Positions 12,440 to 27,929 of a DNA stretch of 64,000 nt are shown here, piece by piece. Within the stretch, counting starts at the first letter, position 1. Each line of letters opens with the position of its first letter. The notes under the pieces were generated by a model. That model had not been told where the DNA came from. It did no database searches and worked only from the letters and a program-made list of their open reading frames with translations. Source of the stretch: Lytechinus pictus (taxonomy: Eukaryota). Location of the stretch: assembly GCF_037042905.1 (NCBI RefSeq), contig NC_087248.1, forward strand, positions 6,014,001-6,078,000, given 5' to 3'. The position numbers and the translations under genes are program-made.

Positions 12440-13020
12440 AATTTTCTTTATTCCTTAATGATATATTCAAGTAACATTTAGTAGATTAATGTTCACTGCA
12501 CGGAGAGAGATGTAAACGGTTTGAAGTAAACGTACGATTATTCTTCTGAGCTCGATTTACACTGCAAAATTTGTGTTGTAAAGTTAACAAGAACGTCTGC
12601 ACAGTACACCACATCAATCTTTACACCAGTGTCCGATGTGTAAATTTGATACCTAAGGTTGTGATCCAAATATCAGGGCCCCGTCTTACAAAGAGTTACT
12701 ATTGATCCGATCAATCAAGTATATGATAATCCATCAATGTCATAATTTTTTCTTTTGGAAATTTGCTCAATTTTCTTTGGAAACAAAGAGAAACATACTG
12801 AATTGCCAAAAATACAGTGAATGTATGAATATACATAATTTCTAGAAAATATTTTGATTTATTAACAGGCATTTTAGATGTTGACGTTGCTGGCTTTACA
12901 TGTATGCGATTGATCGAATCATTCGCAAATCTTTGTAAGACAGGCCCCAGATGTGGGACTTGTGAAGAAATAAAGTTTGGTAGGTCTGTATCGATCACCA
13001 TCCTGCGAACTTGCTATTGC
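12440..13020 (-). other. Candidate 3'-UTR exon of centrocin-like gene A
   Basis: Strong minus-strand acceptor tttacttgttctttttacag| at 13021-13022 and AATAAA at ~12447-12452; pairs with the perfect donor CAG|GTAAG at 15486/15485 just after the gene A stop. Confidence 0.45.
12677..12947. mobile_element. MITE, PIF/Harbinger-like
   Basis: TIRs ggccccgtcttacaaaga / tctttgtaagacaggccc flanked by a CAG 3-bp duplication. Confidence 0.65.
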
Positions 13021-13109
13021 CTGTAAAAAGAACAAGTAAAATAAACACTCTTTATTTAATGAAACTGTCTTTCATTTCTTATTCCGAATTAAGATGGGTA
13101 TACCTCATC

Positions 13110-13590
13110 CATTTGAAAAGGTCAAGTCCATCTCAATAGGAATTTTATTTGAATATAAAGGAGAAAACAAACAAGAATAGAGAAAAGAATAAAAAGGAAA
13201 AAAAAAACACAGGAAAGTTTAAGATATTTTAAAATAATTTGCATAAAGAAGTTATATGCTTGGTGCATTGATATGTCGATGATGTCAACAAATCACTGAG
13301 TCATTTTTGTATTGTATGAATTATACAATGTTTCAATTCTTGCACAAATACAATAAGAAAACATTAAATCGCAATATGTTATTTCAATTTCAATTAAATA
13401 TTTTTAGGGAGGAAGTAGAAAATTGAAATTTGTTATATTATCGATTCCTTCTTTTGCATACCAACCGATACATATGAATTTAGCAAAACTTGTATATGTA
13501 ATAACTCCCTCGATGAAATTTTCAGCATTAAGCTCGTTTGATTGTTCTCTTTTTATTCAATCAACCTTTTATTGGGGTGAGTTTCCCTTT
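13110..13590. mobile_element. Degenerate Kolobok/T2-like MITE (similar copy at ~25588-26169)
   Basis: Ends aaaggtcaagtccatc... / ...ggggtgagtttcccttt and internal gatgaaattttcagca motif shared with the element at 18279-18849. Confidence 0.5.
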
Positions 13591-13681
13591 ACATTTTCTT
13601 ATGGTAACCTGGACTAGCCCGTGGCACTCGTGATCTACAAGGTAAAAATGAAATTGGGTGTTTTTATATAAAATATCAAAT

Positions 13682-13830
13682 AGGCGCGGTAGCTCAGTTG
13701 AGAGCGCGACGTCTCGCAATCCGAAGAACTGGATTCGAAGCTTAGTCAGTCATATTGACGCTCATTAGAAAGATTTCATGGTAAGTTTGATATGGTTCTT
13801 ATCGGATGAACATAATAAACCTTTAATGAC
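13682..13830 (+). mobile_element. Degenerate tRNA-headed SINE fragment
   Basis: ggcgcggTAGCTCAGTTGAgagcg...ggaTTCGAAGc A/B-box-like head without an intact cloverleaf. Confidence 0.45.
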
Positions 13831-14323
13831 TATTGATTTCCTCATGGTATATCTATCATTAGCATTAGGGTTACCATTAAGTGTTCTGAGAAATACATGT
13901 AAGTAAAGTTGGTTGTCATGGTTTCGTATTCATATGCTAATCAAACAAAAGTTCAAGGTAACCGACGGGCGAAACATAAACTGAGTGTCTCAGCCCCTCA
14001 CAATCCATTTCACTGGTAGAATAATGATCTAATTAAATCACCTAGTCAAATTTGTTCTTGATAGATGAGTTGCAAAAAGAATTATGTATATACTGTATTC
14101 ATTTATAGCTCATGGTAAAGGGGTTATCACGGACGGATATTTTTGCTATTTTTTTTTCAACAGTATCCATGTCAAATACTTGATCAATATAAGTCTTCAT
14201 ATCAAAATGTACCAATAATTTGATATGGAAAATAAAAAGGTTTAAGTCTCTCACCACAGAATACCATGAGTGTCAAGAATTGAAATGTGTTATCAAAAAT
14301 AAATAAGAATCTCTTAGCTATTA

Positions 14324-14355
<32 letters not shown>

Positions 14356-14420
14356 ACATTTTACAACATTTTCGTTAGGGTAAACTTCCCCTTTAAATAC
14401 CTCTGATGATGTACTATTGA

Positions 14421-14606
14421 GTGTGTGTGTATGTGTATTTGAGTTTTGTCAGACGTGGATCAATCAGATATGATTATTTACGTCTGGGACCGACCTTTAA
14501 CGTCACCATCCGAAAGACGTGACCGGGGCTCGAACCTCGAACCTCTGCATCAATTTGTAACTTCCCCACATAGCTTGGATTACAGGCGCACGCCACAACG
14601 CCCAGT
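14421..14606 (-). mobile_element. SINE with 7SL/Alu-like head, B-box, Deu-like core and (CA)n tail
   Basis: Minus strand ACTGGGCGTTGTGGCGTGCGCCTGTAATCCAAGCTA matches the vertebrate 7SL 5' end recalled as GCCGGGCGCGGTGGCGCGTGCCTGTAGTCCCAGCTA at 28/36 positions; then GGTTCGAGCCC, gtctttcggatggtgacgttaaa, and a CA tail. Confidence 0.65.
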
Positions 14607-14735
14607 TAGCTATTGGACACTAACCACAACCATGGCGCCATCAATCGAATATTCTCCAAACAATTTCCACTCAATTGTAATGATTAACATACTCAATATT
14701 GAATTTGTATGCCTACGATAAAACAAACTGTAGAG

Positions 14736-14739
<4 letters not shown>

Positions 14740-14780
<41 letters not shown>
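14740..14780. repeat. (AT)n microsatellite
   Basis: Perfect AT run. Confidence 0.95.
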
Positions 14781-14783
<3 letters not shown>

Positions 14784-15510
14784 AGGCGCAGATCCAGAGT
14801 TGGACTTTACGGGGCCCGAATTTTCCTTTTTAAAATGAGAAGAAGAAAGAAGACCAGCAATCCGATAATGAAGGCATTTCGTTTCTAGGAAAGATTGACA
14901 AGCAATGAAAAAATAAGGGGGGGGGGGTCATCGCCTATTTTTCCGGGGTGCATAATGAAAGCATTTTATGGGGTGAAGCACCGGTATGATTTCAAAATTT
15001 TCAGGATTTGTCCGCACCTTCCACAACCACCTCGATCCGCGCCTGTTATAGCTCTATGATCAGGAAAAATATTAAAAGAAACTATTCTATTTGGACTGAA
15101 ATTGTCTAAAATTGTACATTAATCTAGAAAAATGCGTAAATTATCTCTTTTCTTAAACTTCTACATTCATTAAGAGACAAAGTTTGTTTGAAATGAATTA
15201 AAAATTCTACATTCACGAATCATAAGATAGTAGACCACTAGGGGCACATCCGGTCCGTACCCCCCCCCCCCCTTGAGAGGCATAATACAAATTTGTACGG
15301 TAATGTAAATATGCCGTTATGACACACAAGTGTCCACCCCCCCCCCTTCCTTTTTCAAAGCGAGAACTCTCTTTTTTCTTTTTTCTTTTGCTTGTCAATT
15401 TTTTATGTGGACGAAATGAACTTAAATTTCGGGTGAAAACCTTTATTTATTCTTTTTTTTTAGGGGGACTTGGATCCTTCCTTACCTGTAGTAGACTCAC
15501 GTTGATGAAA

Positions 15511-17976
15511 TTATCCAATGATGCCACAAGCCTTGCGAACGCCATTTACAAGCTTCTTAACATCAGCTGTCTCATAGAGGCCATATTCCATGTCTTCTTC
15601 TGAAATCATCTCCGGAAACGCAACTGACATTCTATAGGCTAAACCAATTTTTAGAAAATAAAAAGGAGTTTTGCTAATACATCTGTAATACTAAATTGAT
15701 TCTAGTTAAGAGAGAAAAGAGCATCAGCATATCGATAAGATGTGACTTTTTCAATCAGATAAACGTGCTGTTTCGAATGGTCTTGACTTCCAAAAATCGG
15801 TAATGAAATCATAATGTTTAATTAATTTTCGGGGCAGAAGTTGGGGGATGATTAAAACTTCATAACATAACATCATGAACAAACATGTACAAAGAGCGAG
15901 TGATGTGAGTTCATCAGCCTGATATTATTGAACATCCCAGATATCTTGCAAAGAATAATAATAAACAGAATTGAACAATGGCAAAACAATGAAAGACTTT
16001 TGATGTCAGTTTCTATTTCAGTGTGCAATCTTAATATAATCTGACACTATTTACTCAAATCATGTTAAGTGACAATTACCCACACGGTGTGGGAAATGTT
16101 TCACAGAGTAAATGAAAGGGACTTGTAGGGTGTAAAAAGGACTTCGTTTGACAAAATTCGATTTTTTTTTATTTGATTTTGATTTTATTTGATTTCTGCA
16201 TTCATCAGCTTATGATAATCATGCAACATAAAACATTTCAAGTTTTACAAAACAATAATACAATAGTCATATAAGCATTGACAAATATTATTCACTTGAA
16301 AGAAAATATCATAGTTTAAAGGAATGCAGGAGACCGCCATCGTGAGCGATTAAGCTTGAAAATGATGGCGGCCTCGTAAATATTTTGTCAAACAAAGTCC
16401 TTTTTAATCCGTCAGTTACTTCAGCAAGTCAATTTTTTAAAGGTGAAGGTCTGACAAGTTGTCGGAAGAGATGTCAGTGAAACGCTCCCTGAATACCGTT
16501 TCACTGATGACAGTTGATGGCGCACTTACCTAAATCACGTGAAGGAATTTGATTGACGACATCACACCCAGATTTGACTCCTTTCTTTATGTCATTCCCG
16601 ATCGTCTTTCCTGCATGTTTCACCTTGTTGAAAGCCTTCTTAAACCAGTTCTGCAGCTCCACGTCATCCAAATCTAAATCATCATCTTCTGTAAGCATGG
16701 TAAGTAGAAGAGATAAATTGTATTGTCCGTCAGCTTCAAAATACCGGAATGATTTTTCCCTTATGATTAGACAGTCGCCATGACTATTCAATTTTCAGAC
16801 TAGCATTTAAAACCCATCTTTTTTCTAGTTTGTATGTACATAAAAAGCGTTTTGGGCCAAATAGGAAAGGCGCACACATCATAAATAATGCTTAATAATA
16901 ATTGTGTGAGAAATATTTTATATGCTTTGCGAATAGCACTTGTAAAATGAATTCGATGCATTTGTAATTATTCGAGACGATTGAGCCCCTGCACATTTTA
17001 TTACATAATCAAATATTGCACATCGACGAACAAAATGATTAATCAATGTACAAATGGGACAAAATATTGATCATTTTGTCGTACATTACTGATGAGAAAA
17101 TATGAGATTTAAACAGCTCTGGACGACAAATGTCCATCAAATACTCCCCAGAAAAGACTAACAGAAGACTAAAAGATTCGTCCTTACACCATGTATAATA
17201 TTATGCCATTATACTAAACTATCCCTTTCTCCTCATACCAACTCTCTCGCTCCCTAACCCCCCCCCCCTCACTCTAATTCTCCCTCTCTCCCCCTCTTAA
17301 TCATGTTAATACACACTCTCTCTATCTTTCTCTATCCATCCATTTATTATATCTATCTACCCCTCTCCGTCCCTCTTTCTCTCTTCGTATGTTCGTTTCT
17401 CCATATCATTTTCTCTCACACCCACCCCCTTCTCTCACCGTACTTGTCTGTGCGATGGTGTAAATATATATTATTTATTTATATTTTTAATAAGTGCTCA
17501 AAACTGATTCACAGGCTTGTACAAGTTAGAAAACAAAGATAAACTTTTGAAAGTGTTGGGTAATCTCATGTTTTGCAGCAATAAGATATTCAGATCTAAA
17601 CTCCATCGTATAATAAAGGAAATAAAGGAATGAACCTCAGGCTTTTTTTTTGTTTACATCGACAAATATGAAAACGAGTACAGAACAGGAAAAAAATATA
17701 TACATTAATAATTGTTATGGTATTTGCTTCATGTAAACATTCTTTGGAAAGTCGACAATTGCACTCCCTCTTTAGGTTTTGACCTCCAAGTACTTTTCCA
17801 TACATTTCCAGAAAGGGGTAACGAACGCACACTCAACCATTAATGTACAAAGTAAGGATTTTATTGATCTTACCAAGCATATCTTCAAGCATGTATTCAT
17901 CAAATTCTTCCTCATCATAACCATATCCCAACGACACTGCCAACGCCAAAGCTAGGAAGAAAATCGTCACCTTCAT
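15511..17976 (-). CDS. Centrocin-like antimicrobial peptide precursor A (129 aa); coding exons 17976-17874, 16688-16530, 15638-15511
   Basis: GT-AG phase-1 introns join to MKVTIFFLALALAVSLGYG-YDEEEFDEYMLEDMLEDDDLDLDDVELQ-NWFKKAFNKVKHAGKTIGNDIKKGVKSGCDVVNQIPSRDLAYRMSVAFPEMISEEDMEYGLYETA-DVKKLVNGVRKACGIIG*. Heavy chain resembles centrocin GWFKKTFHKVSHAVKSGIHAGQRGC. An alternative in-frame exon-3 acceptor (tcag) lies 15 nt downstream. Confidence 0.85.
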
Positions 17977-18278
17977 TTTGGTGGTATTTGATCTGCAAAG
18001 GAGATAAACAAAATGTTTTTTAAACTGTTTCAGTAAAGCTTCAAATTCAATTTTAAAAAAAATCATGACTCCAGTGAAATTGAATGATTTCATTTCGTGA
18101 TAGAACCTGAAATTTGAATGATTTTGATTTTCATTAATGTTTCCTTTTCAGCCTACACAATATAATGAACTCCAATGATTCCCATTGTTATAATGATTGT
18201 TGGCCTAAAAACATTTCAAACAAAATACACAGACAACACTGGACTAGGACAACTTATACAAGTAAGATTTGAATTTAA

Positions 18279-18849
18279 AGGGATGCTCCGGGCTGAGAGT
18301 ATTTATATCTAAATAAATGGAGTACAATTCAGAAAGCAAAATGCTGAAAATTTCATCAAAATTGGATAACAGATAACAAAGTTATTGAATTTTAAAGTTT
18401 AGCTATATTTTTTTAAACAGTTATATGCACGTCGTCATGAATATTCATTAGGTGGGCTGATGATGTCACATACCCACATTATTTTTTTTATGTTATTACA
18501 TGTAATCATAATTGTTTGATTTTTTTCATATGTGTAAATGATGTGTCTCCAATATAATGAATTACGTTGCAGCAATAAATAACTAAATAATGCACTTAAT
18601 CAGTTGTTTATCCAATTGTTGTAGTTTTTTATAGAAAAATTCTTAATAAACCTAATTTCATGTAATAAAATACAAAAGAACTAGCGGGGATATGACATCA
18701 TCAGCCCACCTAAAGAATATTCATGTAGACATGCCTAGACCTGTTTCAGCGAAATAATGCATATCTTTAAAATTCAATAACTTCGTTATTTGTTGTCCGA
18801 TTTTGACTGATCAAACTTCAATTTTCCGCAATTTGCCTGGATCATCCCT
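18279..18849. mobile_element. Non-autonomous Kolobok/T2-like MITE
   Basis: TTAA target duplication on both sides; TIRs agggatgctccgggc / gcctggatcatccct; long imperfect internal inverted repeat. Confidence 0.8.
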
Positions 18850-21549
18850 TTAATTTTTTTTTTTTTCTTTTTTTTTTTAATCTTCGAATGATTTTCATTT
18901 GATGTATTTTTAAAGAAACATTGAACTAAACAAGGAGGAAATATTTGAATTATTAGTATAAAGATGCAAATATGCCAATCAAATTTATAATTCGTATAGA
19001 TTAGGATAACAATTTTGCCAAATAATGACGCACTGGCTTAATACCGTATCTATCTGGTCTGAAGAACATTAGTTATAAACTGGTTAATAGTCAAATCGTG
19101 GAATCAGGATTGCATGAAATTGTAATGACATTAATTATCTTGCGCATATATTTTGAAACGAATCACATTTTTAATACTATAAAATTCCATGTGAACAAGA
19201 TATCACAATGGTATTGTCGTTGGGGATAAATAATGCCCTACAATGGAAATAAATTAACCCCCCCCCAAAAAAAAAAAAAAAAAAAAAAAAAATGGTTAAA
19301 CTTCGTGTAAGAAGGACTTGATTTTTTTTAAGGATTATAAAAATCTACACTATATGGTAACGAAAATGCAAATATCTTTAAAAGCTACAACTCTACACTC
19401 TGATATGGAATTGACACATTTCCGATAATAAATGTTCAGTATCTATATAGGTTACTGAAGAAACATAAACGAAAACAAAATCATGGTATGGTTACCCGTG
19501 TGCTGTAACGATGATGAGATGAATCTATCTTCCGATACGAACGAGGGTGATTCTTTGATATAAACTGCAGCAATATATCTAGACCAACGTGCTTATCTTG
19601 CCCTCTCGCACCTTTCACTCACTCTGACACCAAGCGGATTGAGTCTTTGATAACGAAAAATATATGAATATACTTGATACATGCCTTTTTATTCACGATT
19701 TTCATACACTGCTATAAAAGGTAAACGCAGTGCAAACACATTTTATCCCAAAGCTCCGCTGTTATTGGCCAATTGTTGTGATCACGTGACGAGGAGCAGT
19801 GCGGAATAGAAAGGAGATGTAGGCTATATAGTGTTAACTTCACTGTCATGAATAGAGTTATCTCAGCATATGGCCGTCTAACACATCTTGTGGTAAAATA
19901 TCACTGGCTATGTTGAAATAATGGATTTACAGGAATGAATTAAATAAAAAATGAAATAAAAATTGTTTGTGCTAGTTTTTTGTTCTACTCCCGTTCTTTT
20001 AGTTCATTTACATTTATACGTGCTTGGTCGGTTCGTTCTTTGTGAGTGTGATGGAGATGAGAATCAAAACTATTTATATTTGCTTTCTTCAGGGCCCTGG
20101 GAACGATTTTAAATGGGGGGGGGGGGGGGTAATGTGTGTTTTGTTTTGAAATTGTTCCAAAATGAAGGAGATGTTGGTAAACAAAAAAAAAAGACGAGCA
20201 ATTTTTGCTTGTCAACCTGATTTGCAGGGGGTTGTTGGCTATGATAAATAACATTCGCAGCACTTCCTGAAGAATATTTGGGTGTGAACAGCATCCCCAG
20301 CCTCAACATTCAGATGAGCTAAAAAGTATACCACGGGAGAAAGGTTTATAGCATTGTCCAAATAGAAATGAAATGTGTCCGTTAGTTTAGTTACTTCAGG
20401 TTGTTTTTATACGACTTATGCGAAATGAGGCAATTGAGTTCTTTCTTTTTCTTGAATAAACAAAAAAAAATCCAATTAATGAGAATGATTTTGCTACACT
20501 CAGACAGTAATAATCATGAAAACTGCATTAAAAAAACTTATTACGGGTATAGGCAAAATAACAAAAAATTAATCTTTTTGGTTTTACCATGAGTCAACTT
20601 TGGTAGTCAGTGAGTTCTAATGAGTTCATGAAGACAATTCCATTGTTCCACTACCAATACATTGCACTTCATATACTTTTATTTTTTGCTTGTTTGTTAG
20701 TTTGTTTGTTTTTTACTACCTAATGCCTTCCCATATTCTAAAGTATGCACCTTTTTGGTTTTCTTTTTTTTTCTGAAATACTAGCATGTTCACAGTCTAG
20801 ATATCTAAAATCGGAAAGCTTCATAACAATCCCTTTCATGTATACTCCTGGCTCATCCATCTTACTCAAGCGTGAAGGTAATCGTTAAAAAAATGGTGAC
20901 CATATGTAATGATTTCTAGGATAAAACGAACATCTTTCTAATATAACTGGTATATGTCCAATACCAGCAGTTTTCATAGAGTGTGTCTTGGATTCATCTC
21001 ATCTGCTATGCAATACCATTCTTGATTCTTCCTGAGTGTACGGGTAGGCGATCGATCAAATTTGAAGCACAATTAGTTGTCGTAACGTTACATTCCATTG
21101 GTGATGATAATGATTGATGATTGGAGGTATATCTTCTTTAGAGGGCGCTTTATCTATCTACAAATAGATGAATTCTGACACAAGACCGGTAGTTTTCATT
21201 TTCAGGGTTATTTTCCTCCTGTAAACCTCGATTCCAGATTGCAACAGTAAGGTAAGTTTGTCCATATTACTATCCATTTTGTTCATATGTTATTTTGTTC
21301 CCTGAAAATGACTTGTTCATAATTGTATAGATGTAAGAAACACATGAAGAAGAATCGCTGTGTAGGGAGGAGTGGGAAAGTCAAAAAGAAAATAATTTTA
21401 GATGATCAAAGTTTATTGCTGTATAATATAGTCATCATGTTGGCAGGATGAATAACAATCTTTGGATATATCTAAATCTTAGAAATTCATTTTAAAAGGT
21501 CATTTACGACTTTGTAGTAGGGCATAATATCCATATTTTGGTGACAGTA

Positions 21550-21788
21550 CGCTGTAAAAACTGTGGTGTTAAAACTGACACCAGTTGGTGTTAATAGAGG
21601 ACCACACCCTGAGGTGTTAAAATAACACCCTAGAGATTGAACATAACACCAAAGAGTATAAATGTAACAATCATAGGTGTTGTAATAACACCTATAGGTG
21701 TAAAACTAACACTACCGATTTAACACCGGTGTAAAATAACTGGTGTGGTCCTCTATATACACCGGTTAACACCACAGTTTTTGCTGTG
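21550..21788. mobile_element. MITE with TA flanks and internal taacacc/ggtgtta repeats (related fragments at ~3228-3452 and ~12560-12670)
   Basis: TIRs ..aaaaactgtggtgttaa / ttaacaccacagttttt.. Confidence 0.7.
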
Positions 21789-22446
21789 TACTTTTTGAAC
21801 TCAATCATTGATCATATGCACCGCTTCCAGTATTAAACGTATGAGCCCATTGAAATTAATTATTGTACCTAAGATTCTTTACATTGAAAGAAGACACGAG
21901 GGCTTGCTTATTTTACAAGCACTGCTTTCAGGCTTTTAGGCAAGCCTCCTCCGTTTTGTTACATCATTTTGTTTTCTTAGCTGAGTCTGATTCGTTCTTG
22001 TTAAATTGGGATGTTTTAAATTCAAACCTGAATTAATCACTGAATGATTTATTATTATACATTCATATTGTTATGTTTGATATCATTTTTGTAAATATTT
22101 GACTCTGTGGGCCTAATGTTAGTTTNNNNNNNNNNNNNNNNNNNNNNNNNNNNNNNNNNNNNNNNNNNNNNNNNNNNNNNNNNNNNNNNNNNNNNNNNNN
22201 NNNNNNNNNNNNNNNNNNNNNNNNNNNNNNNNNNNNNNNNNNNNNNNNNNNNNNNNNNNNNNNNNNNNNNNNNNNNNNNNNNNNNNNNNNNNNNNNNNNN
22301 NNNNNNNNNNNNNNNNNNNNNNNNNAATAACAAAAAAATCTTGGTGAATCCTATTAATTCTTAGTATTGAAATGAAACTTTATTGTTTTGCTTCAATGTT
22401 TTTTTTTTTTCGGGTTAAGTTCACATCAGCGGACTGTCAATTCATA

Positions 22447-24858
22447 ATGAACTACTCGTCGATTGTCATCATAGTGCTGCTAGCTGTGATCGGGTTAGAC
22501 CTCGGACAAGCTACTTACGATCATGACCTTGAATTTACAGAGGATGAGTTCCAAACTCTAATGGATATGATGGAGGGTAAGAGTTTTCTTTTCAACTTTA
22601 ACACCTTTGAATTTCAGATGGGAGGAGAGAACAACTGACTTTTATCATGGATAGAACAATGTAAACCCAAAACTAAGAGTGGGGTGGGCTGGCTTAAGTT
22701 TGCATTCATATCATAAATGAGAAAAACAGAAGAGGAAGAAAGAAATATGTTTATGTAAAGACTGAAGTAAAGGCAGAATAATAATTGGTGTTGTGGGTGT
22801 AAAACGACCGAGAGAGAGGGTCAGAGAGAGAGTGAGGGAAAAGTTGGATGATGGGGCGGCGGCTCCCTGTATGCTAGGTTCATAACCCACACGGAAAACG
22901 TATTTAATCTCCCTTACTTAAAATCATTATTTCAAGCTATACTGGAGACAGATAATGAAAACGTCAAGAATGTGCATAACGAAGAAACAAAACGCACACA
23001 CCAGCGACACGGTTGAGTTTTACAGATGTAAAACGATTTTGATTTGTAAGAACATAACTGAATGAAAGATTGATGAATGATTTTCCTGGTTTTAGTTTGA
23101 ATAATTGATTTGTACTGCTTACTGGTACATTGCATGTGCATATGCTCGACAAAGACCCTCATTTTTTTCAAAGCGCTGCAAGTTTCTTGTTCAATATTTA
23201 AACGATTGTAACAGATTCGGAGGCTGAACGCGATTGTTCTATTCGTTAGCATAAACACTATCATTTTGTTTTTGTTTTAATTATCTGTTATCTTTCTATT
23301 GATGTGTTGTTATATGATTGATATTTCATTACCTATTCATGTTTTACACTTAATGATTACCAGTTATCTGTTATTTTCTTTCTATTTTATTTATTGATTT
23401 GTTGTTTATATGATTGACATTAATTACCTCTTAAAACTGTAAACTTATATTCATACTTTGTTTCTATTTAAATTGATTATATTGCACTTGTTTTATTTAC
23501 GTTATGTTTAAATTGTAAAGCGCTGTATTGTATTAAGTTCTATATAAAAGCTCCATATTATCATTTATTATTATCATTTTATTTTCAATATCTTAACAAT
23601 TACAATAGATTCAGAGAATGAACGAGATGTGCGCCTCTCTAACTGGTTTAAAAAGGCATTTAATTCTGCCAAAGATTGGACGAAAAAGGCCGCCAGTGAC
23701 GCAGGGAAATGGACGAAGAAGGCTGCCAGCGATGCAGGAAAATGGACCAAAAAAGCCGTCAAAGACGCAGGCAAAGCAATCAAGAAAGGATGTGGATATG
23801 TCAACGAGATACCGGTAAAAGAACTTGGTAAGGGATTCTCTTTCCTGTATTTCTACTTTCAAAAGTCAAAATACAATGTCAAGATTCAGAATTTGATATT
23901 CATTTGCTGTCATTACAATTGGGCAAATTTTTATTTTCGTTTCTCAATCATTCAGTCTAACTCCTTTTCCAATTTTACTGATTCAGATAANNNNNNNNNN
24001 NNNNNNNNNNNNNNNNNNNNNNNNNNNNNNNNNNNNNNNNNNNNNNNNNNNNNNNNNNNNNNNNNNNNNNNNNNNNNNNNNNNNNNNNNNNNNNNNNNNN
24101 NNNNNNNNNNNNNNNNNNNNNNNNNNNNNNNNNNNNNNNNNNNNNNNNNNNNNNNNNNNNNNNNNNNNNNNNNNNNNNNNNNNNNNNNNNNNNNNNNNNN
24201 NNNNNNNNNNNNTGCTGATGATGACGATGTCAATAAATCATGGTGATGGAGATGATGATTATGATTAAGCGAAGGTTGCAATTATTGTCTGACAAGTTGT
24301 CATATCTGACAACTTTCCTTGATTTTGATTGGCCGAAAAGCGCAGGTGTTTGACTGTTGCGAAAGTAACTGCTGGATAAAACAAACTCTATATTGTCTAA
24401 TAAATTGTCTGACAAATCTTTTCAAGGAACTTCCCTGTGCCCATGCAGTCTTAAGAATTGTAATTGATTCGATTGATCTCAACTATGGAAAGTCAGCAAA
24501 AAAAATAGTTTTTAAGTGTTTTTTTAATTATGGCATAATATGCATGCAACGTTGTCTTAAAAAAATCAGTCCGCCTTTTCCCTTTCCAAGTGGATGATGC
24601 TGTGTACGTTTCCTACATGAATAATTATGACATCGGTGGCTTTCCATAGCTGATTTCAGTTTCAACCTAAAACATATAATATAAACGTGTAATAACATGA
24701 CAACAAATACTCAAATATACATTTTAAATATATTTTATTCAGTTTATCACAGAACGAAGGAGATGACAGAAGAAGAGTTTATGTCGGATGTCGACGAGGC
24801 TCAGCTAGCAGCAGCTTACAATGCTTTAAAATCAGGTTGCAAAATCATTGGAAAGTAG
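22447..24858 (+). CDS. Centrocin-like antimicrobial peptide precursor B (154 aa) with repeat-expanded heavy chain; coding exons 22447-22576, 23609-23827, 24743-24858
   Basis: GT-AG phase-1 introns join to MNYSSIVIIVLLAVIGLDLGQA-TYDHDLEFTEDEFQTLMDMMEDSENERDVRLS-NWFKKAFNSAKDWTKKAASDAGKWTKKAASDAGKWTKKAVKDAGKAIKKGCGYVNEIPVKELVYHRTKEMTEEEFMSDVDEA-QLAAAYNALKSGCKIIGK*. Same exon layout as gene A. An N-gap in intron 2 could hide further sequence; an alternative exon-2 acceptor gives a start at 23615. Confidence 0.85.
23644..23775 (+). repeat. Coding 33-nt tandem repeat (four 11-aa units each starting with Trp)
   Basis: TGG codons at 23644, 23677, 23710 and 23743; units WFKKAFNSAKD / WTKKAASDAGK / WTKKAASDAGK / WTKKAVKDAGK. 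Confidence 0.9.
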
Positions 24859-24965
24859 AAGGATGCACATCGACTTACTCTCCCTCTTTCAAATCAGGTG
24901 TCTCTATTATGCTACAATCTGACAGTCATACCAAGGAAACCGCCTGCAAACCGAACGATTGTTAC

Positions 24966-25350
24966 CGTGTTTACACTTGATCGGCTTTTGGTTCAGAACC
25001 AAAAGCCGATGCAGAATCGGCTTTTGGTTTATCTTGCACTGCGTTTACACGCTGTTACAGCTCGCGGTTCAGAACCGCGAGCCGATGCAAAAACCCAAAG
25101 ACAACACTGTATCCGTGCGCTTACAATTACGTCAAAATGGTAAAGTAAATGAAATGCGCACCAATTGCCGATGCAGAATCGGCTTTCTGTTTACACGTAG
25201 TCAAAAAGCCGATTCTGCATCGGCTCGCAGTTCAGAACCTACTACTTTGGTGGTGCAAAATTGCCGGTTCTGAATCGCGAGCCGATGCAAGTTAATCGCG
25301 TTTACATGCTATGAGAAAGCCGATGCAAAAGCCGATTAAGTGTAAACACG
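24966..25350. mobile_element. MITE just downstream of the gene B stop codon
   Basis: TIRs cgtgtttacacttgatcggcttt / aaagccgattaagtgtaaacacg; internal gccgatgca and gttcagaacc repeats. Confidence 0.75.
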
Positions 25351-27929
25351 ATATGTATGTCATAGGAAATAATATTATAACTTGGGACGGACTGAATTAG
25401 GTTTCGCCGGTGTCACCGGGTATTACTCTATAAGAGAATAATCATTATCCCCAATAACATGTTATAATAATCAGATCATTCTACATTAAATTTTACTGGT
25501 CAGATGTCTAAATAATAAATACCATCATCCTTTGCCTTTGGGGTCCAAAATTTGTTTGCATTTATTCTTTGTTTCGTTTTCTAATTTCAAGGACAAGTCC
25601 ACCCCCCCCGCAAAAAAAGGAGAAAAATCCAGCAAGCATAAAACTGAAAATTTCATCAAAATCGCATGTAAAATAGGAAAGTTATGACCTTTTAAAATTT
25701 TGCTTAATTTCACAAATCAGTTATATGCACATCCTGGTCGGTACTGATGACTGAGGACTGATGACAGCACTCACTCACCCACTTTTTCGTTTGTATTTTA
25801 TTATATGAAATTAGAATATTATATTCTCCTCATTGGGAAATAAGCTTTCTTCCTCCATGAACATGGGGAATTACAATTGTTTTACCATTTTATGGTTCAG
25901 TCAAGCTGGTCCTTATTATCAAATCTGTAAAATTGAAATATTGTAGATTTCAAACAATAAAAACAAAAGAAATTGTGAGTGACAGACATCATCGACTGTC
26001 TCATTTACATGCCACTGAGTTGCGCATAACTGTTTTGTAAAAAAAGTGTCAAGTGTCATAATTTTCTTATTTTACATTCGATTTTGATGAAATTTTCAGC
26101 GTTATTCTTCTTTGATTTTTCTTCATTGATTGAAATAAAAAAAAATTATGGGATGGACTTGAGCTTTAACTCTTATGACACTCGATATATGCTGAAATGC
26201 TTTGTTAGATTTGATGAAAAGTTCTTGAAATAGCGGTTCATCCGGATACAAAATTAATGTGTCAAGATGTAATTTAAAAAAAATGTATTTCAGACATACG
26301 AAACTGAGAACCAAACGATTCATCATACGAACAATACAATGTTATTTTATCAGATACAAATGTTTGTTAATGTTAGTTCCTCTTATTTTCATTAATGCAA
26401 CTTATATTTTGTTTGCCAGATCACAGGTATATACATGTATAGTTGTATTTGTTTAGTTTCCAATAATGATCGGACCTTGTCTATATAATATCATTAGAAA
26501 AGTTGCTCTTGTGATCATGATGATTATAGGACGGTTATTTTTGTCGTTGTTAGCAAAGATCTTGACGACGACTACGATGATGATAAAGATGATAACAATG
26601 ATGATAACAATGATATAGATGGTCATCATGGTGTTNNNNNNNNNNNNNNNNNNNNNNNNNNNNNNNNNNNNNNNNNNNNNNNNNNNNNNNNNNNNNNNNN
26701 NNNNNNNNNNNNNNNNNNNNNNNNNNNNNNNNNNNNNNNNNNNNNNNNNNNNNNNNNNNNNNNNNNTTGTTATTGATGTTATTTTGTTCACTCGTCTTCC
26801 TCCTTACTTTTCATCCTTTCTTTCAGCTTCTTTTCCTTTTTTCCCTCTTTCTTTCCACTTTTTTCTCTTTTTTGTTTGTTCCGTCAATAGGGGGGGGCTC
26901 GCCACCCCCCCCCCCCCCCGATCTGCCTACGCATATCAATAATAATTGCGAATTTGTTATTTTTTTCATCCCTGGTATTCTTCAGCACCCACAGTAAGCA
27001 AACATAAATCTGACAATGTATACTATGAGCATTATGTTTGTAACAATGATTTGTTAAATTTCACTGGCGTATAGATGGGGGAGGCTTAATATAGCACCCG
27101 CCCTTTATAAACATATTTCCACGACCACGAGGAACTTGATTTGAGGAAAAAGAGGAAATTAACGAGAAAGGTAAAAGGTAGAAAAAATATTGAAAAAGTG
27201 CAAGGCTGATATCATTAATACAGTCATGTCAAAATGTATCACAAATATATATTTTGGTTCTAAAAGCGTCGAAATTCTATCTTGCCTGTGACTTTTAAAG
27301 AGATTTTGCCCTACATGCCATAGACCTATACTTTCCCTAAAAGATTTTGGCTCATTATGCCGCTGTTATACAATTCAATGGTTTATGACATCATCATGAC
27401 GCCTTCATCTTTAGACATAACATGCACACATTTGTATTATTTTTTTTTCTTTGTATGAATTCATGTAAAAAAAATATGTACACATTTGGGAGATGGTAGA
27501 AAATAAGGGTTTATTTGAATTGCATTGAATTGAATTGAATTTAATTTAATTCAATGACGTTGGATGTTTGCCCTGTTGCAAAGAGTAAATAGCGAGTTGG
27601 TTTTCCCCACTTGTTTAAAGGGGAAATGTATACAGTTAGTTGACTATAATCATGATAATAAAAAAAGTGCATTAAAACAATTTAGTTACAACGATTTGAA
27701 TTGTGAATCTGTTTTAAACCGGGATAAGTAACATAACAAGGTCATTATGCGAATGGGTTACCCGATAATTGATCGTGCCAAAGGATTATTTTTTAACATA
27801 TGATTATCATACTATGCCCTCAAAAGTTTACACTTTGTCGCTGTGTCGCCAATAGTAGTATAAGTATATATTAGTATTTATTTATTGTCAAAAAATGGAA
27901 ATTCTTCTTGTTTACATGCTGTGCAACAA

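What the first reader, a model, noticed from the sequence alone, without database searches (positions are those of the whole stretch)
15511..24858. Head-to-head pair of spliced centrocin-like heterodimeric antimicrobial peptide genes, probably a distinct subfamily
Seen in sequence: two divergent genes share the same three-coding-exon layout with both introns in phase 1. Both precursors read signal, acidic pro-piece, Lys-rich amphipathic chain starting NWFKKAFN with one Cys, conserved GCxxVNxIPxxxLxY, acidic linker, and a short second chain with one Cys ending CxIIG(K). Established knowledge: sea urchin centrocins are disulfide-linked heavy/light-chain AMPs cut from one precursor, with bromotryptophan near the N-terminus and an amidated light chain. 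Inference: these are centrocin relatives, but the light chains (DVKKLVNGVRKACGII, QLAAAYNALKSGCKII), the linker motif and the additional coding intron differ from the centrocins I recall, so they may be an undescribed branch that ORF-based annotation misses.
Basis: partly seen in the sequence, partly recalled or inferred. Interest (0 to 1): 0.9.

Follow-up and report, generated by a model that had tools for sequence, protein, structure and literature searches.

The report
Paired centrocin-like peptide genes in urchin
Two back-to-back sea urchin (Lytechinus pictus) genes are real and conserved, and one is shown spliced and expressed; they encode secreted precursors built like centrocin antimicrobial peptides and belong to a small gene family that databases list only as "uncharacterized".

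Summary
Gene A (minus strand) and gene B (plus strand) each have three coding exons, with both coding introns in phase 1.

- **Gene A transcripts:** spliced cDNA contigs from two studies give all its junctions. They also add a non-coding first exon and a 3'UTR intron, so gene A reaches about 12820-19663.
- **Assembly gaps:** both gaps lie in introns of gene B. No coding exon touches an N.
- **Database identity:** the deduced proteins equal L. pictus RefSeq models LOC129258513 (129 aa) and LOC129258509 (154 aa), both named "uncharacterized protein".
- **Precursor layout:** signal peptide, acidic pro-piece, cationic amphipathic chain starting N-W-F-K-K with one Cys, acidic linker, then a short tail with one Cys ending in Gly or Gly-Lys. 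This is the published centrocin layout.
[quoted passage not shown] The light chains do not match.
- **Family:** seven loci in this genome and at least six in S. purpuratus. The same head-to-head A/B pair exists in S. purpuratus, so A and B are old lineages, probably distinct from the canonical centrocins.

Processing, the disulfide link, Trp bromination and antimicrobial activity remain inferred. Annotation did not miss the genes; only their function is undescribed.

The parts
19496..19663 (-). Gene A exon 1, non-coding (5'UTR). The transcription start is near 19663.
   Evidence: The cDNA contigs in X1 and X5 end at 19641 and 19663, with the joint 17992|19496. There is no ATG in the 184-nt 5'UTR. 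An AATAAAAAG TATA-like element lies about 25 nt upstream.
17874..17992 (-). Gene A exon 2. ATG at 17976. Encodes the signal peptide and most of the acidic pro-piece. Ends in phase 1.
16530..16688 (-). Gene A exon 3. Encodes the end of the pro-piece and the whole cationic chain NWFKKAFNKVKHAGKTIGNDIKKGVKSGCDVVNQIPSRDL. Phase 1 at both ends.
   Evidence: Joints 16688|17874 and 15638|16530.
15486..15638 (-). Gene A exon 4. Encodes the acidic linker and the C-terminal Cys peptide. Stop codon at 15513..15511, then 25 nt of 3'UTR up to a GTAAGG donor.
   Evidence: The contig lies on 15485-15638 and then continues on sequence found at 12990-13019.
13021..15485 (-). Gene A 3'UTR intron.
   Evidence: Donor CTACAG|GTAAGG and acceptor tttttacag|GCAATAGC. 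The contig parts that do not lie on the stretch match 12990-13019.
12820..13020 (-). Gene A terminal non-coding exon. The lower end is approximate.
   Evidence: 151 nt (X1) and 200 nt (X5) of contig lie beyond the joint. An AATAAA signal sits on the minus strand near 12860.
19758..19791 (.). Conserved promoter block (CACGTG E-box plus palindromic ATTGGCCAAT), about 100 nt upstream of the gene A start.
   Evidence: It is the only non-coding block between the two start codons that is conserved with S. purpuratus, at 88% over 34 nt.
21198..21251 (+). Gene B exon 1, non-coding (probable).
   Evidence: A 679-nt contig in X5 starts here and leaves the stretch at a CAGTAAG|gtaagt donor.
22126..22325 (.). 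Assembly gap 1, inside gene B's 5'UTR intron.
   Evidence: It lies between exon 1 (21198-21251) and the exon that carries the ATG.
22420..22576 (+). Gene B exon 2. ATG at 22447. Encodes the signal peptide and acidic pro-piece. Ends in phase 1. The 5' border at 22420 is inferred from an AG only.
   Evidence: Conserved with S. purpuratus.
23609..23827 (+). Gene B exon 3. Encodes the cationic chain NWFKKAFNSAKD(WTKKAASDAGK)x3-like...KKGCGYVNEIPVKEL. Phase 1 at both ends.
   Evidence: All sampled words are held by cDNA runs of two studies.
23677..23775 (+). Three tandem 33-nt units, giving 11-residue Trp-led repeats that lengthen gene B's heavy chain.
   Evidence: Tandem Repeats Finder: period 33, 3.0 copies, 78% matches. 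The same three repeats occur in the S. purpuratus ortholog.
23991..24212 (.). Assembly gap 2, inside the gene B intron between coding exons 2 and 3. Its right flank (24213-24267) is a GAT-rich microsatellite.
24743..24858 (+). Gene B exon 4, coding part. Encodes the acidic linker and QLAAAYNALKSGCKIIGK. Stop codon at 24856-24858.

Best explanation
Genes A and B are two old paralogs of a sea-urchin gene family that encodes small secreted prepropeptides of the centrocin type.

Shown:
- Both are intact genes, and gene A is transcribed and spliced.
- They sit head to head, with transcription starts about 1.5 kb apart.
- The pair and its exon structure are conserved in S. purpuratus.
- Each product has a hydrophobic signal, a strongly acidic pro-piece (net -16 and -10), a Lys-rich chain that is amphipathic along its whole length (net +6 and +10) and begins N-W, one Cys followed by the invariant motif V-N-x-[IL]-P, an acidic linker, and a +3 tail with the second Cys ending in Gly or Gly-Lys.

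Inferred by analogy with the centrocins:
- The acidic pieces neutralise the cationic helix during export and are cut away.
- The two Cys form the single disulfide that ties a long heavy chain to a short, C-terminally amidated light chain (N-terminal Asp in A; pyroglutamate from Gln in B).
- Trp at position 2 may be brominated.
- The heavy chain kills microbes by inserting its amphipathic helix into their membranes.
- Gene B's heavy chain has been lengthened by three 11-residue repeats.
For: - **Gene reality:** spliced cDNA contigs from two studies cover gene A with zero intron depth. The same runs hold all sampled words of B's large exon. Translations equal RefSeq P0008 and P0003.
- **Conservation:** the S. 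purpuratus locus L033 carries both orthologs head to head with the same intron phases. Gene A is 75% identical overall and 28/34 in the heavy chain. The A clade has support 98/95 and the B clade 92/94.
- **Family:** seven loci in the genome share the same three-exon split. Invariant positions are W49, G75, C76, V79, N80, L87 and C125.
- **Physical chemistry:** charges are as stated. The best 18-residue hydrophobic moment in the heavy chain is 0.63 in A (equalled by 8 of 2000 shuffles) and 0.67 in B (1 of 2000). The moment over the whole A chain is 0.61. AlphaFold2 predicts helices only.
- **Link to centrocins:** the published layout and sizes match. Centrocin 1 heavy chain against gene A scores 61 with 0 of 2000 shuffles reaching it, and against the C11 paralog 66 with 0 of 2000. 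The family heavy-chain profile scores centrocin 1 at 12.9 bits (0 of 5000 shuffles) and EeCentrocin 2 at 12.5 bits (1 of 5000).
- **Published chemistry that fits:** the EeCentrocin 1 light chain starts with Asp and is amidated after Gly-Arg. The EeCentrocin 2 light chain is pyroglutamate-blocked.
Against: - No peptide-level data exist for these genes.
- The linkers have no dibasic cleavage sites, so processing is assumed, not read from the sequence.
- The tails show no sequence similarity to the EeCentrocin 1 light chain.
- B's heavy chain is only weakly similar to centrocin heavy chains (18 of 2000 shuffles).
- A five-sequence family profile searched against 1.84 billion proteins did not return canonical centrocin precursors at E <= 0.001.
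- Two deep RNA-seq runs show no reads on gene A, so expression is restricted, and I could not learn to which tissue.
- The AlphaFold2 model has low confidence (pLDDT 58).
Confidence: 0.62

Rival explanations
1. Same genes and secretion, but the linker is not removed. The product is a single-chain helical hairpin held by one intramolecular disulfide. It acts as a soluble membrane- or lipid-binding protein, antimicrobial or not, rather than as a two-chain peptide.
For: There are no dibasic or other recognisable cleavage sites at the proposed chain ends. AlphaFold2 also predicts helices in the linker. Between Lytechinus and Strongylocentrotus the gene A linker is about as conserved as the chains, 23/31.
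Against: In centrocins the equally acidic 24-residue interchain is removed. The C-terminal Gly or Gly-Lys and the conserved Gln before the tail look like peptide-maturation signals. Acidic and cationic segments alternate, as in pro-peptide-masked antimicrobial peptides (PMC10608444).
Confidence: 0.15
2. The peptides are processed but serve a non-immune role, for example as secreted signalling peptides, as cytolytic components of pedicellarial venom, or in egg or larval surface biology. The likeness to centrocins would then be convergence of amphipathic cationic helices.
For: Similarity to centrocins is limited to about 12-28 residues of a low-complexity amphipathic chain. The profile also picks up unrelated bacterial proteins with Trp-led 11-residue repeats, so the repeat motif arises independently. 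The tissue of expression is unknown.
Against: The W-F-K-K-x-F-x-K-V-x-H-A match with centrocin 1 is order-specific (0 of 2000 shuffles). The whole precursor layout matches too, including heavy-chain start position, one Cys per chain and the C-terminal Gly signal. Both families occur in the same group of sea urchins.
Confidence: 0.13
3. These are simply the Lytechinus orthologs of the already described centrocins 1 and 2, not a separate branch.
For: Short queries with three published heavy chains found no other centrocin-like locus in this genome. Precursor sizes are close (129 against 119-121 aa).
Against: S. purpuratus has its own gene A ortholog, whose heavy chain is 82% identical to L. pictus A. 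The centrocin 1 heavy chain of the congener S. droebachiensis is only about 54% identical to it, and that alignment needs gaps. The light chains do not match. The empty genome searches are insensitive: the same query type also missed gene A itself.
Confidence: 0.1

Closest known systems
Centrocins 1 and 2 of Strongylocentrotus droebachiensis (Li et al. 2010; heavy chain in PMC3561256)
   Same: The heavy chain starts x-W-F-K-K and shares W-F-K-K-x-F-x-K-V-x-H-A with gene A. There is one Cys near the heavy-chain end. The precursor has a signal, an acidic pro-piece, an interchain and a short light chain with one Cys and a C-terminal Gly(-basic). The heavy chain is cationic and amphipathic.
   Different: After the Cys, the heavy chain reads x-x-V-N-x-[IL]-P instead of S-A-L-G-F. 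The tails are 16-19 residues rather than the 12-residue centrocin light chain, and show no similarity to the one published light chain tested (EeCentrocin 1). Gene B's heavy chain is 56 residues because of three 11-residue repeats. There are two coding introns plus two UTR introns, against one intron as I recall from the 2010 abstract. No peptide has been isolated.
EeCentrocins 1 and 2 of Echinus esculentus (PMC4805251)
   Same: The layout is 20 + 30 + 30/32 + 24 + 15 residues, with the heavy chain starting at residue 51. The light chain of one starts with Asp and is amidated, as predicted for gene A. The other starts with pyroglutamate, as predicted for gene B from its conserved Gln. The N-K-V-K-H-A block of EeCentrocin 2 is present in gene A.
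   Different: Overall heavy-chain similarity is weak: the family profile gives 5.5 bits for EeCentrocin 1, reached by 115 of 5000 shuffles. The light chain DIGKYCGYAHALN has no counterpart. The EeCentrocin heavy chains hold two modified Trp each (positions 2 and 3 in EeCentrocin 1, 1 and 9 in EeCentrocin 2), whereas gene A has one Trp.
Halocidin and dicynthaurin of the ascidian Halocynthia aurantium (as summarised in PMC10608444)
   Same: These are helical antimicrobial peptides made of two chains joined by a single disulfide.
   Different: They come from another phylum and are not cut from a heavy-linker-light precursor of this type. No sequence similarity was tested or expected.

Membership tests
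Centrocins (heterodimeric sea-urchin antimicrobial peptides) | Precursor order: signal, anionic pro-piece, cationic heavy chain, interchain, light chain, C-terminal Gly(-basic). | tested here: met
   The published layout is.
Centrocins (heterodimeric sea-urchin antimicrobial peptides) | The heavy chain begins x-Trp (or Trp) about 50 residues into the precursor. | tested here: met
   Trp is at position 49 in gene A and 56 in gene B, and at 51-54 in the paralogs. In EeCentrocins the heavy chain starts at Gly-51 or Trp-51.
Centrocins (heterodimeric sea-urchin antimicrobial peptides) | Exactly one Cys in the heavy chain, near its C-terminus, and one in the light chain. | tested here: met
   Cys76 and Cys125 in gene A; Cys105 and Cys149 in gene B; no other Cys. 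Both are invariant in 16 family members.
Centrocins (heterodimeric sea-urchin antimicrobial peptides) | Heavy-chain sequence similarity to published centrocin heavy chains. | tested here: met
   Gene A against centrocin 1 scores 61, reached by 0 of 2000 shuffles. Gene A against EeCentrocin 1 scores 43, also 0 of 2000. Gene B is weaker: 18 of 2000 shuffles reach its score against centrocin 1.
Centrocins (heterodimeric sea-urchin antimicrobial peptides) | Light-chain sequence similarity. | tested here: not met
   The EeCentrocin 1 light chain scores at chance against the family tail profile (3501 of 5000 shuffles reach it). Pairwise against gene A, 856 of 2000 shuffles reach its score.
Centrocins (heterodimeric sea-urchin antimicrobial peptides) | Conserved prepro and interchain sequences, reported as 58-79% similar among known centrocins. 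| tested here: inconclusive
The family profile did not return them at E <= 0.001 among 1.84 billion proteins.
Centrocins (heterodimeric sea-urchin antimicrobial peptides) | The interchain is removed and the chains are joined by one disulfide. | not testable with these tools
   This needs mass spectrometry with and without reduction.
Centrocins (heterodimeric sea-urchin antimicrobial peptides) | 6-bromo-tryptophan near the heavy-chain N-terminus. | not testable with these tools
   Only the conserved Trp can be seen in the sequence.
Centrocins (heterodimeric sea-urchin antimicrobial peptides) | Micromolar antimicrobial activity of the heavy chain, and expression in coelomocytes or late larvae. 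| not tested
   Gene A is abundant in cDNA of two studies and absent from two other RNA-seq runs. Sample identities are coded.
Centrocins (heterodimeric sea-urchin antimicrobial peptides) | Gene structure: one intron reported for S. droebachiensis centrocin genes. This is my recollection of the Li et al. 2010 abstract and was not verified here. | tested here: inconclusive
   Gene A has four introns, two of them coding and phase 1. The published count may cover only the PCR-amplified part of the gene.

The most novel reading that the evidence does not exclude
The A/B pair is part of an undescribed, ancient centrocin-like superfamily of camarodont sea urchins: seven loci in L. pictus, at least six in S. 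purpuratus, and at least three lineages older than the Lytechinus-Strongylocentrotus split. The canonical centrocins would be one divergent branch of it. Within the family, heavy-chain length is set by gain and loss of a 33-nt (11-residue, Trp-led) repeat, from no clear repeat in gene A to about seven copies in the chromosome-13 paralog. That would give a natural length series of amphipathic helices. The A/B pair would be driven by a conserved shared promoter region containing an E-box and a double CCAAT element.
Probability: 0.4. Interest if true: 0.55.

Novelty: new variant of a known kind. Interest (0 to 1): 0.45.

Why it matters
Centrocins have been characterised as peptides in two sea-urchin species only. 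In the papers I could search, no antimicrobial peptide gene has been characterised in Lytechinus. If these genes make centrocin-type peptides, about a dozen "uncharacterized LOC" entries in three model sea-urchin genomes gain a function. L. pictus would gain effector genes for innate-immunity work that could be tested by knockout. The family also offers a set of natural heavy-chain variants, from 34 to roughly 100 residues, as templates for antimicrobial peptide work. This is an annotation and family-definition advance, not a new principle.

Tried and rejected
- **124-aa model of gene A.** My first model used the acceptor at 15623. The cDNA contigs and RefSeq use 15638.
- **Word-index protein searches.** The three searches returned only Lytechinus and S. 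purpuratus "uncharacterized" proteins and no named centrocin.
- **Profile search of 1.84 billion proteins.** It gave other urchin family members, one metagenomic triple-repeat precursor and bacterial repeat proteins, but no canonical centrocin.
- **Published heavy chains as queries on the own genome.** Three 30-32-residue queries found nothing. The tool is insensitive at this length, since it also missed gene A, so this shows nothing.
- **Pfam.** No family reached its cut-off. Moricin reached 17 bits on gene B, below its cut-off of 27.6.
- **AlphaFold2 and Foldseek.** The gene A model had pLDDT 58. Foldseek against AlphaFold DB clusters gave only noise, best E = 0.24.
- **Literature.** None of the six RefSeq locus (LOC) identifiers I searched appears in the searchable papers. 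Nothing describes centrocins in Lytechinus beyond 4-residue alignments in PMC4857251.
- **Full centrocin precursors.** The paper supplements do not hold them.
- **Inverted duplication at DNA level between A and B.** None was found, so the duplication is old.
- **Complex prediction of heavy chain with light chain.** Not run, because the tails are shorter than the tool's 30-residue minimum.

Full report
**1. What is in the sequence**

Reading 15000-25500 on both strands and locating splice motifs gives two divergent genes.
- Gene A, minus strand, has coding exons 17976..17874, 16688..16530 and 15638..15511.
- Gene B, plus strand, has coding exons 22447..22576, 23609..23827 and 24743..24858.
- All four coding introns start gtaag, end ag, and interrupt the codon after its first base (phase 1).
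- With these borders the translations are 129 and 154 residues. They are identical to two L. pictus RefSeq proteins, P0008 (LOC129258513 isoform X1) and P0003 (LOC129258509).
- The window is therefore Lytechinus pictus, contig C4 at about 6.01-6.08 Mb of an 812-Mb assembly.
- My first model of gene A used an AG 15 nt further in and lacked AYRMS. That was wrong (see section 2).

**2. Transcript evidence and the gaps**

Runs that hold gene A's large coding exon were found in two studies. Laying two of them, plus two raw RNA-seq runs, on 15300-21299 gave the following.
- One spliced contig per run (729 nt at depth 469 in X1; 801 nt at depth 11 in X5) lies without mismatch on 19496-19641/19663, 17874-17992, 16530-16688 and 15485-15638.
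- The joints are 17992|19496, 16688|17874 and 15638|16530, all GT..AG on the minus strand. Intron depth is zero.
- Both contigs run on for 151-200 nt onto sequence that lies at 12990-13019 of the window, behind a tttttacag acceptor.

Gene A therefore has five exons: a non-coding first exon, three coding exons, and a last non-coding exon reached through a 2.5-kb 3'UTR intron whose donor lies 25 nt past the stop. It spans about 12820-19663, more than the finding's range.

A 679-nt contig of X5 starts on 21198-21251 and leaves at a gtaagt donor. This is most simply B's non-coding first exon. The two transcription starts are then about 1.5 kb apart.

The two raw RNA-seq runs (about 6% of each read) put no reads on gene A, so expression is not ubiquitous.

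The gaps do not touch coding sequence. The gap at 22126-22325 falls in B's 5'UTR intron and the gap at 23991-24212 in B's second coding intron. No exon holds an N. The right flank of the second gap is a GAT-rich microsatellite, and the same repeat fills about 500 nt of the corresponding S. purpuratus intron, which plausibly explains the gap.

B's coding junctions were not seen in reads. Three things support them:
- all sampled words of its large exon occur in the same cDNA runs;
- the L. variegatus protein is identical;
- the S. purpuratus ortholog reads through the same junction in an independent assembly.

**3. The proteins**

Each precursor has these parts:

| Part | Gene A | Gene B |
|---|---|---|
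| N-terminus | hydrophobic signal | hydrophobic signal |
| Pro-piece, net charge | -16 | -10 |
| Lys-rich chain from N-W-F-K-K-A-F-N to five residues past the first Cys | 34 aa, +6 | 56 aa, +10 |
| Linker, net charge | -5 | -5 |
| Tail with second Cys | +3, ends G | +3, ends GK |

- There are exactly two Cys per protein.
- The cationic chains are amphipathic helices. The best 18-residue hydrophobic moment is 0.63 in A (equalled by 8 of 2000 shuffles) and 0.67 in B (1 of 2000). The moment over the whole 34-residue A chain is 0.61.
- AlphaFold2 predicts only helices, at low confidence (pLDDT 58).
- B's chain contains three 11-residue units encoded by a 33-nt tandem repeat.
- Pfam has nothing for these proteins.

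**4. A family, and an old one**

- Searching the genome with gene A's exon and with a five-protein profile finds seven loci: the pair here, three tandem copies on C11, one on C16 and one on C13. All are split into the same three coding exons.
- The C11 copies have the same two phase-1 introns and also a donor a few bases after the stop.
- Database relatives are all "uncharacterized protein" entries of L. pictus, L. variegatus and S. purpuratus, plus one marine metatranscriptome sequence.
- Invariant positions across 16 members are the Trp, G-C-x-x-V-N, a Leu seven residues after the Asn (L87), and the second Cys. The Pro of V-N-x-[IL]-P is nearly invariant.
- The S. purpuratus locus of the B ortholog (L033) carries an A ortholog on the opposite strand upstream. 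It is 129 aa and 75% identical (heavy chain 28/34), with the same phases and a donor just after the stop.
- The six coding exons are colinear between the two species. One 34-nt non-coding block is conserved, at L. pictus 19758-19791. It holds an E-box and a palindromic double CCAAT, about 100 nt upstream of gene A's start.
- A maximum-likelihood tree groups the orthologs: A clade 98/95, B clade 92/94, C13 with an S. purpuratus gene 91/94.
- The head-to-head pair therefore predates the split of Toxopneustidae and Strongylocentrotidae.

**5. Relation to centrocins**

Published facts (PMC4805251 and PMC3561256):
- Centrocins are a 30-32-residue cationic heavy chain and a 12-13-residue light chain joined by one disulfide.
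- They are cut from a 119-121-residue precursor of 20 (signal) + 30 (pro) + heavy chain + 24 (interchain) + 15 residues. The last 15 are the light chain plus a Gly-Arg that is removed, with amidation in EeCentrocin 1.
- The heavy chain starts x-Trp or Trp, and that Trp is brominated.
- The EeCentrocin 2 light chain is pyroglutamate-blocked.

Genes A and B match this plan part for part. This includes a tail starting with Asp in A and a conserved Gln before the tail in B.

Sequence tests against composition-preserving shuffles:

| Comparison | Score | Shuffles reaching it |
|---|---|---|
| Centrocin 1 heavy chain vs gene A | 61 | 0 of 2000 |
| Centrocin 1 heavy chain vs C11 paralog | 66 | 0 of 2000 |
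| Centrocin 1 heavy chain vs gene B | 35 | 18 of 2000 |
| Family heavy-chain profile vs centrocin 1 | 12.9 bits | 0 of 5000 |
| Family heavy-chain profile vs EeCentrocin 2 | 12.5 bits | 1 of 5000 |
| Family heavy-chain profile vs EeCentrocin 1 | 5.5 bits | 115 of 5000 |
| Family tail profile vs EeCentrocin 1 light chain | -2.3 bits | 3501 of 5000 (chance) |

- The family profile did not bring back canonical precursors at E <= 0.001, and I could not obtain them for a direct test.
- S. droebachiensis is a congener of S. purpuratus. Its centrocin 1 heavy chain is only about 54% identical to the S. purpuratus gene A ortholog, and that alignment needs gaps. The canonical centrocins are therefore probably not the orthologs of gene A.
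- My reading is that genes A and B work like centrocins and are probably distant relatives forming separate, conserved lineages. Family membership is established for the layout and the heavy chain only.

**6. Mechanism, and what is inferred**

Shown: gene structure, transcription of gene A, conservation, and the charge and amphipathic pattern.

Inferred:
- signal cleavage;
- removal of the acidic pieces that mask the cationic helix;
- one inter-chain disulfide;
- C-terminal amidation from Gly or Gly-Lys;
- pyroglutamate in B;
- bromination of Trp;
- membrane attack by the heavy chain.

The invariant V-N-x-[IL]-P after the first Cys, and the D-V-x-L-x before the N/S-W, are candidate processing signals. 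This is inference only.

**7. Verdict**

I file this as a new variant of a known kind, of moderate interest.

Noticed in passing
window 18290-18830: A high-copy element with nested inverted arms (18356-18410/18752-18806 and 18415-18527/18634-18746) sits in gene A's 5'UTR intron. Word depth reaches the thousands in the cDNA runs, and reads with many variants map there, so it looks like a transcribed MITE-like repeat.
   Followed up: partly
L033:9885-10030 (S. purpuratus GCA_000002235.4): In the S. purpuratus B ortholog, the signal-peptide part of exon 1 is out of frame by one base with the rest. This is why the RefSeq model (116 aa) starts at an internal Met and has no signal peptide. It could be an assembly error, an allele or a decaying gene.
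   Followed up: partly
L031:409-1362 (ENA ERZ23496718 metagenome scaffold): An intronless 317-aa precursor carries two copies of an acidic spacer followed by SWFKKAFNKVKNFGKK..., nearly identical to the start of gene A's heavy chain, plus a third, divergent unit. It has one Cys, in the signal region, and none in the repeat units. The source organism is unknown.
   Followed up: partly
proteins P0020, P0024, P0031, P0033, P0034 (metagenomic; apparently bacterial, source organisms not checked): Metagenomic proteins with long runs of Trp-led 11-residue repeats (for example NWTENAVDDAS) match the repeat part of the urchin heavy chains. This is probably an independently arising amphipathic 11/3 repeat, not homology.
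   Followed up: no
window 15486-15513; L013, L015; L033 near 3894: A splice donor 4-25 nt after the stop codon, hence a 3'UTR intron, recurs in gene A, in the C11 paralogs and in the S. purpuratus gene A ortholog. Gene B has a candidate donor at 24897|24898 that was not verified.
   Followed up: partly
window 12672-12952: A 71-nt inverted-repeat pair overlaps gene A's terminal non-coding exon, so part of the 3'UTR may derive from a small mobile element.
   Followed up: no
window 24963-25353: A cluster of short inverted repeats built on GCCGATGCAGAATCGGC lies just downstream of gene B. It looks like a foldback or MITE-like element.
   Followed up: no
RefSeq entries seen: The identical gene A protein is filed under two L. 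pictus loci (LOC129258511 and LOC129258513), but this assembly holds one copy only. RefSeq isoform X2 (128 aa) uses a NAGNAG acceptor at exon 3, which was not seen in the contigs.
   Followed up: partly
gene A protein, residues 52, 60, 63, 73: All four differences between the L. pictus and L. variegatus gene A proteins fall in the heavy chain. The gene B protein is identical in the two species.
   Followed up: no
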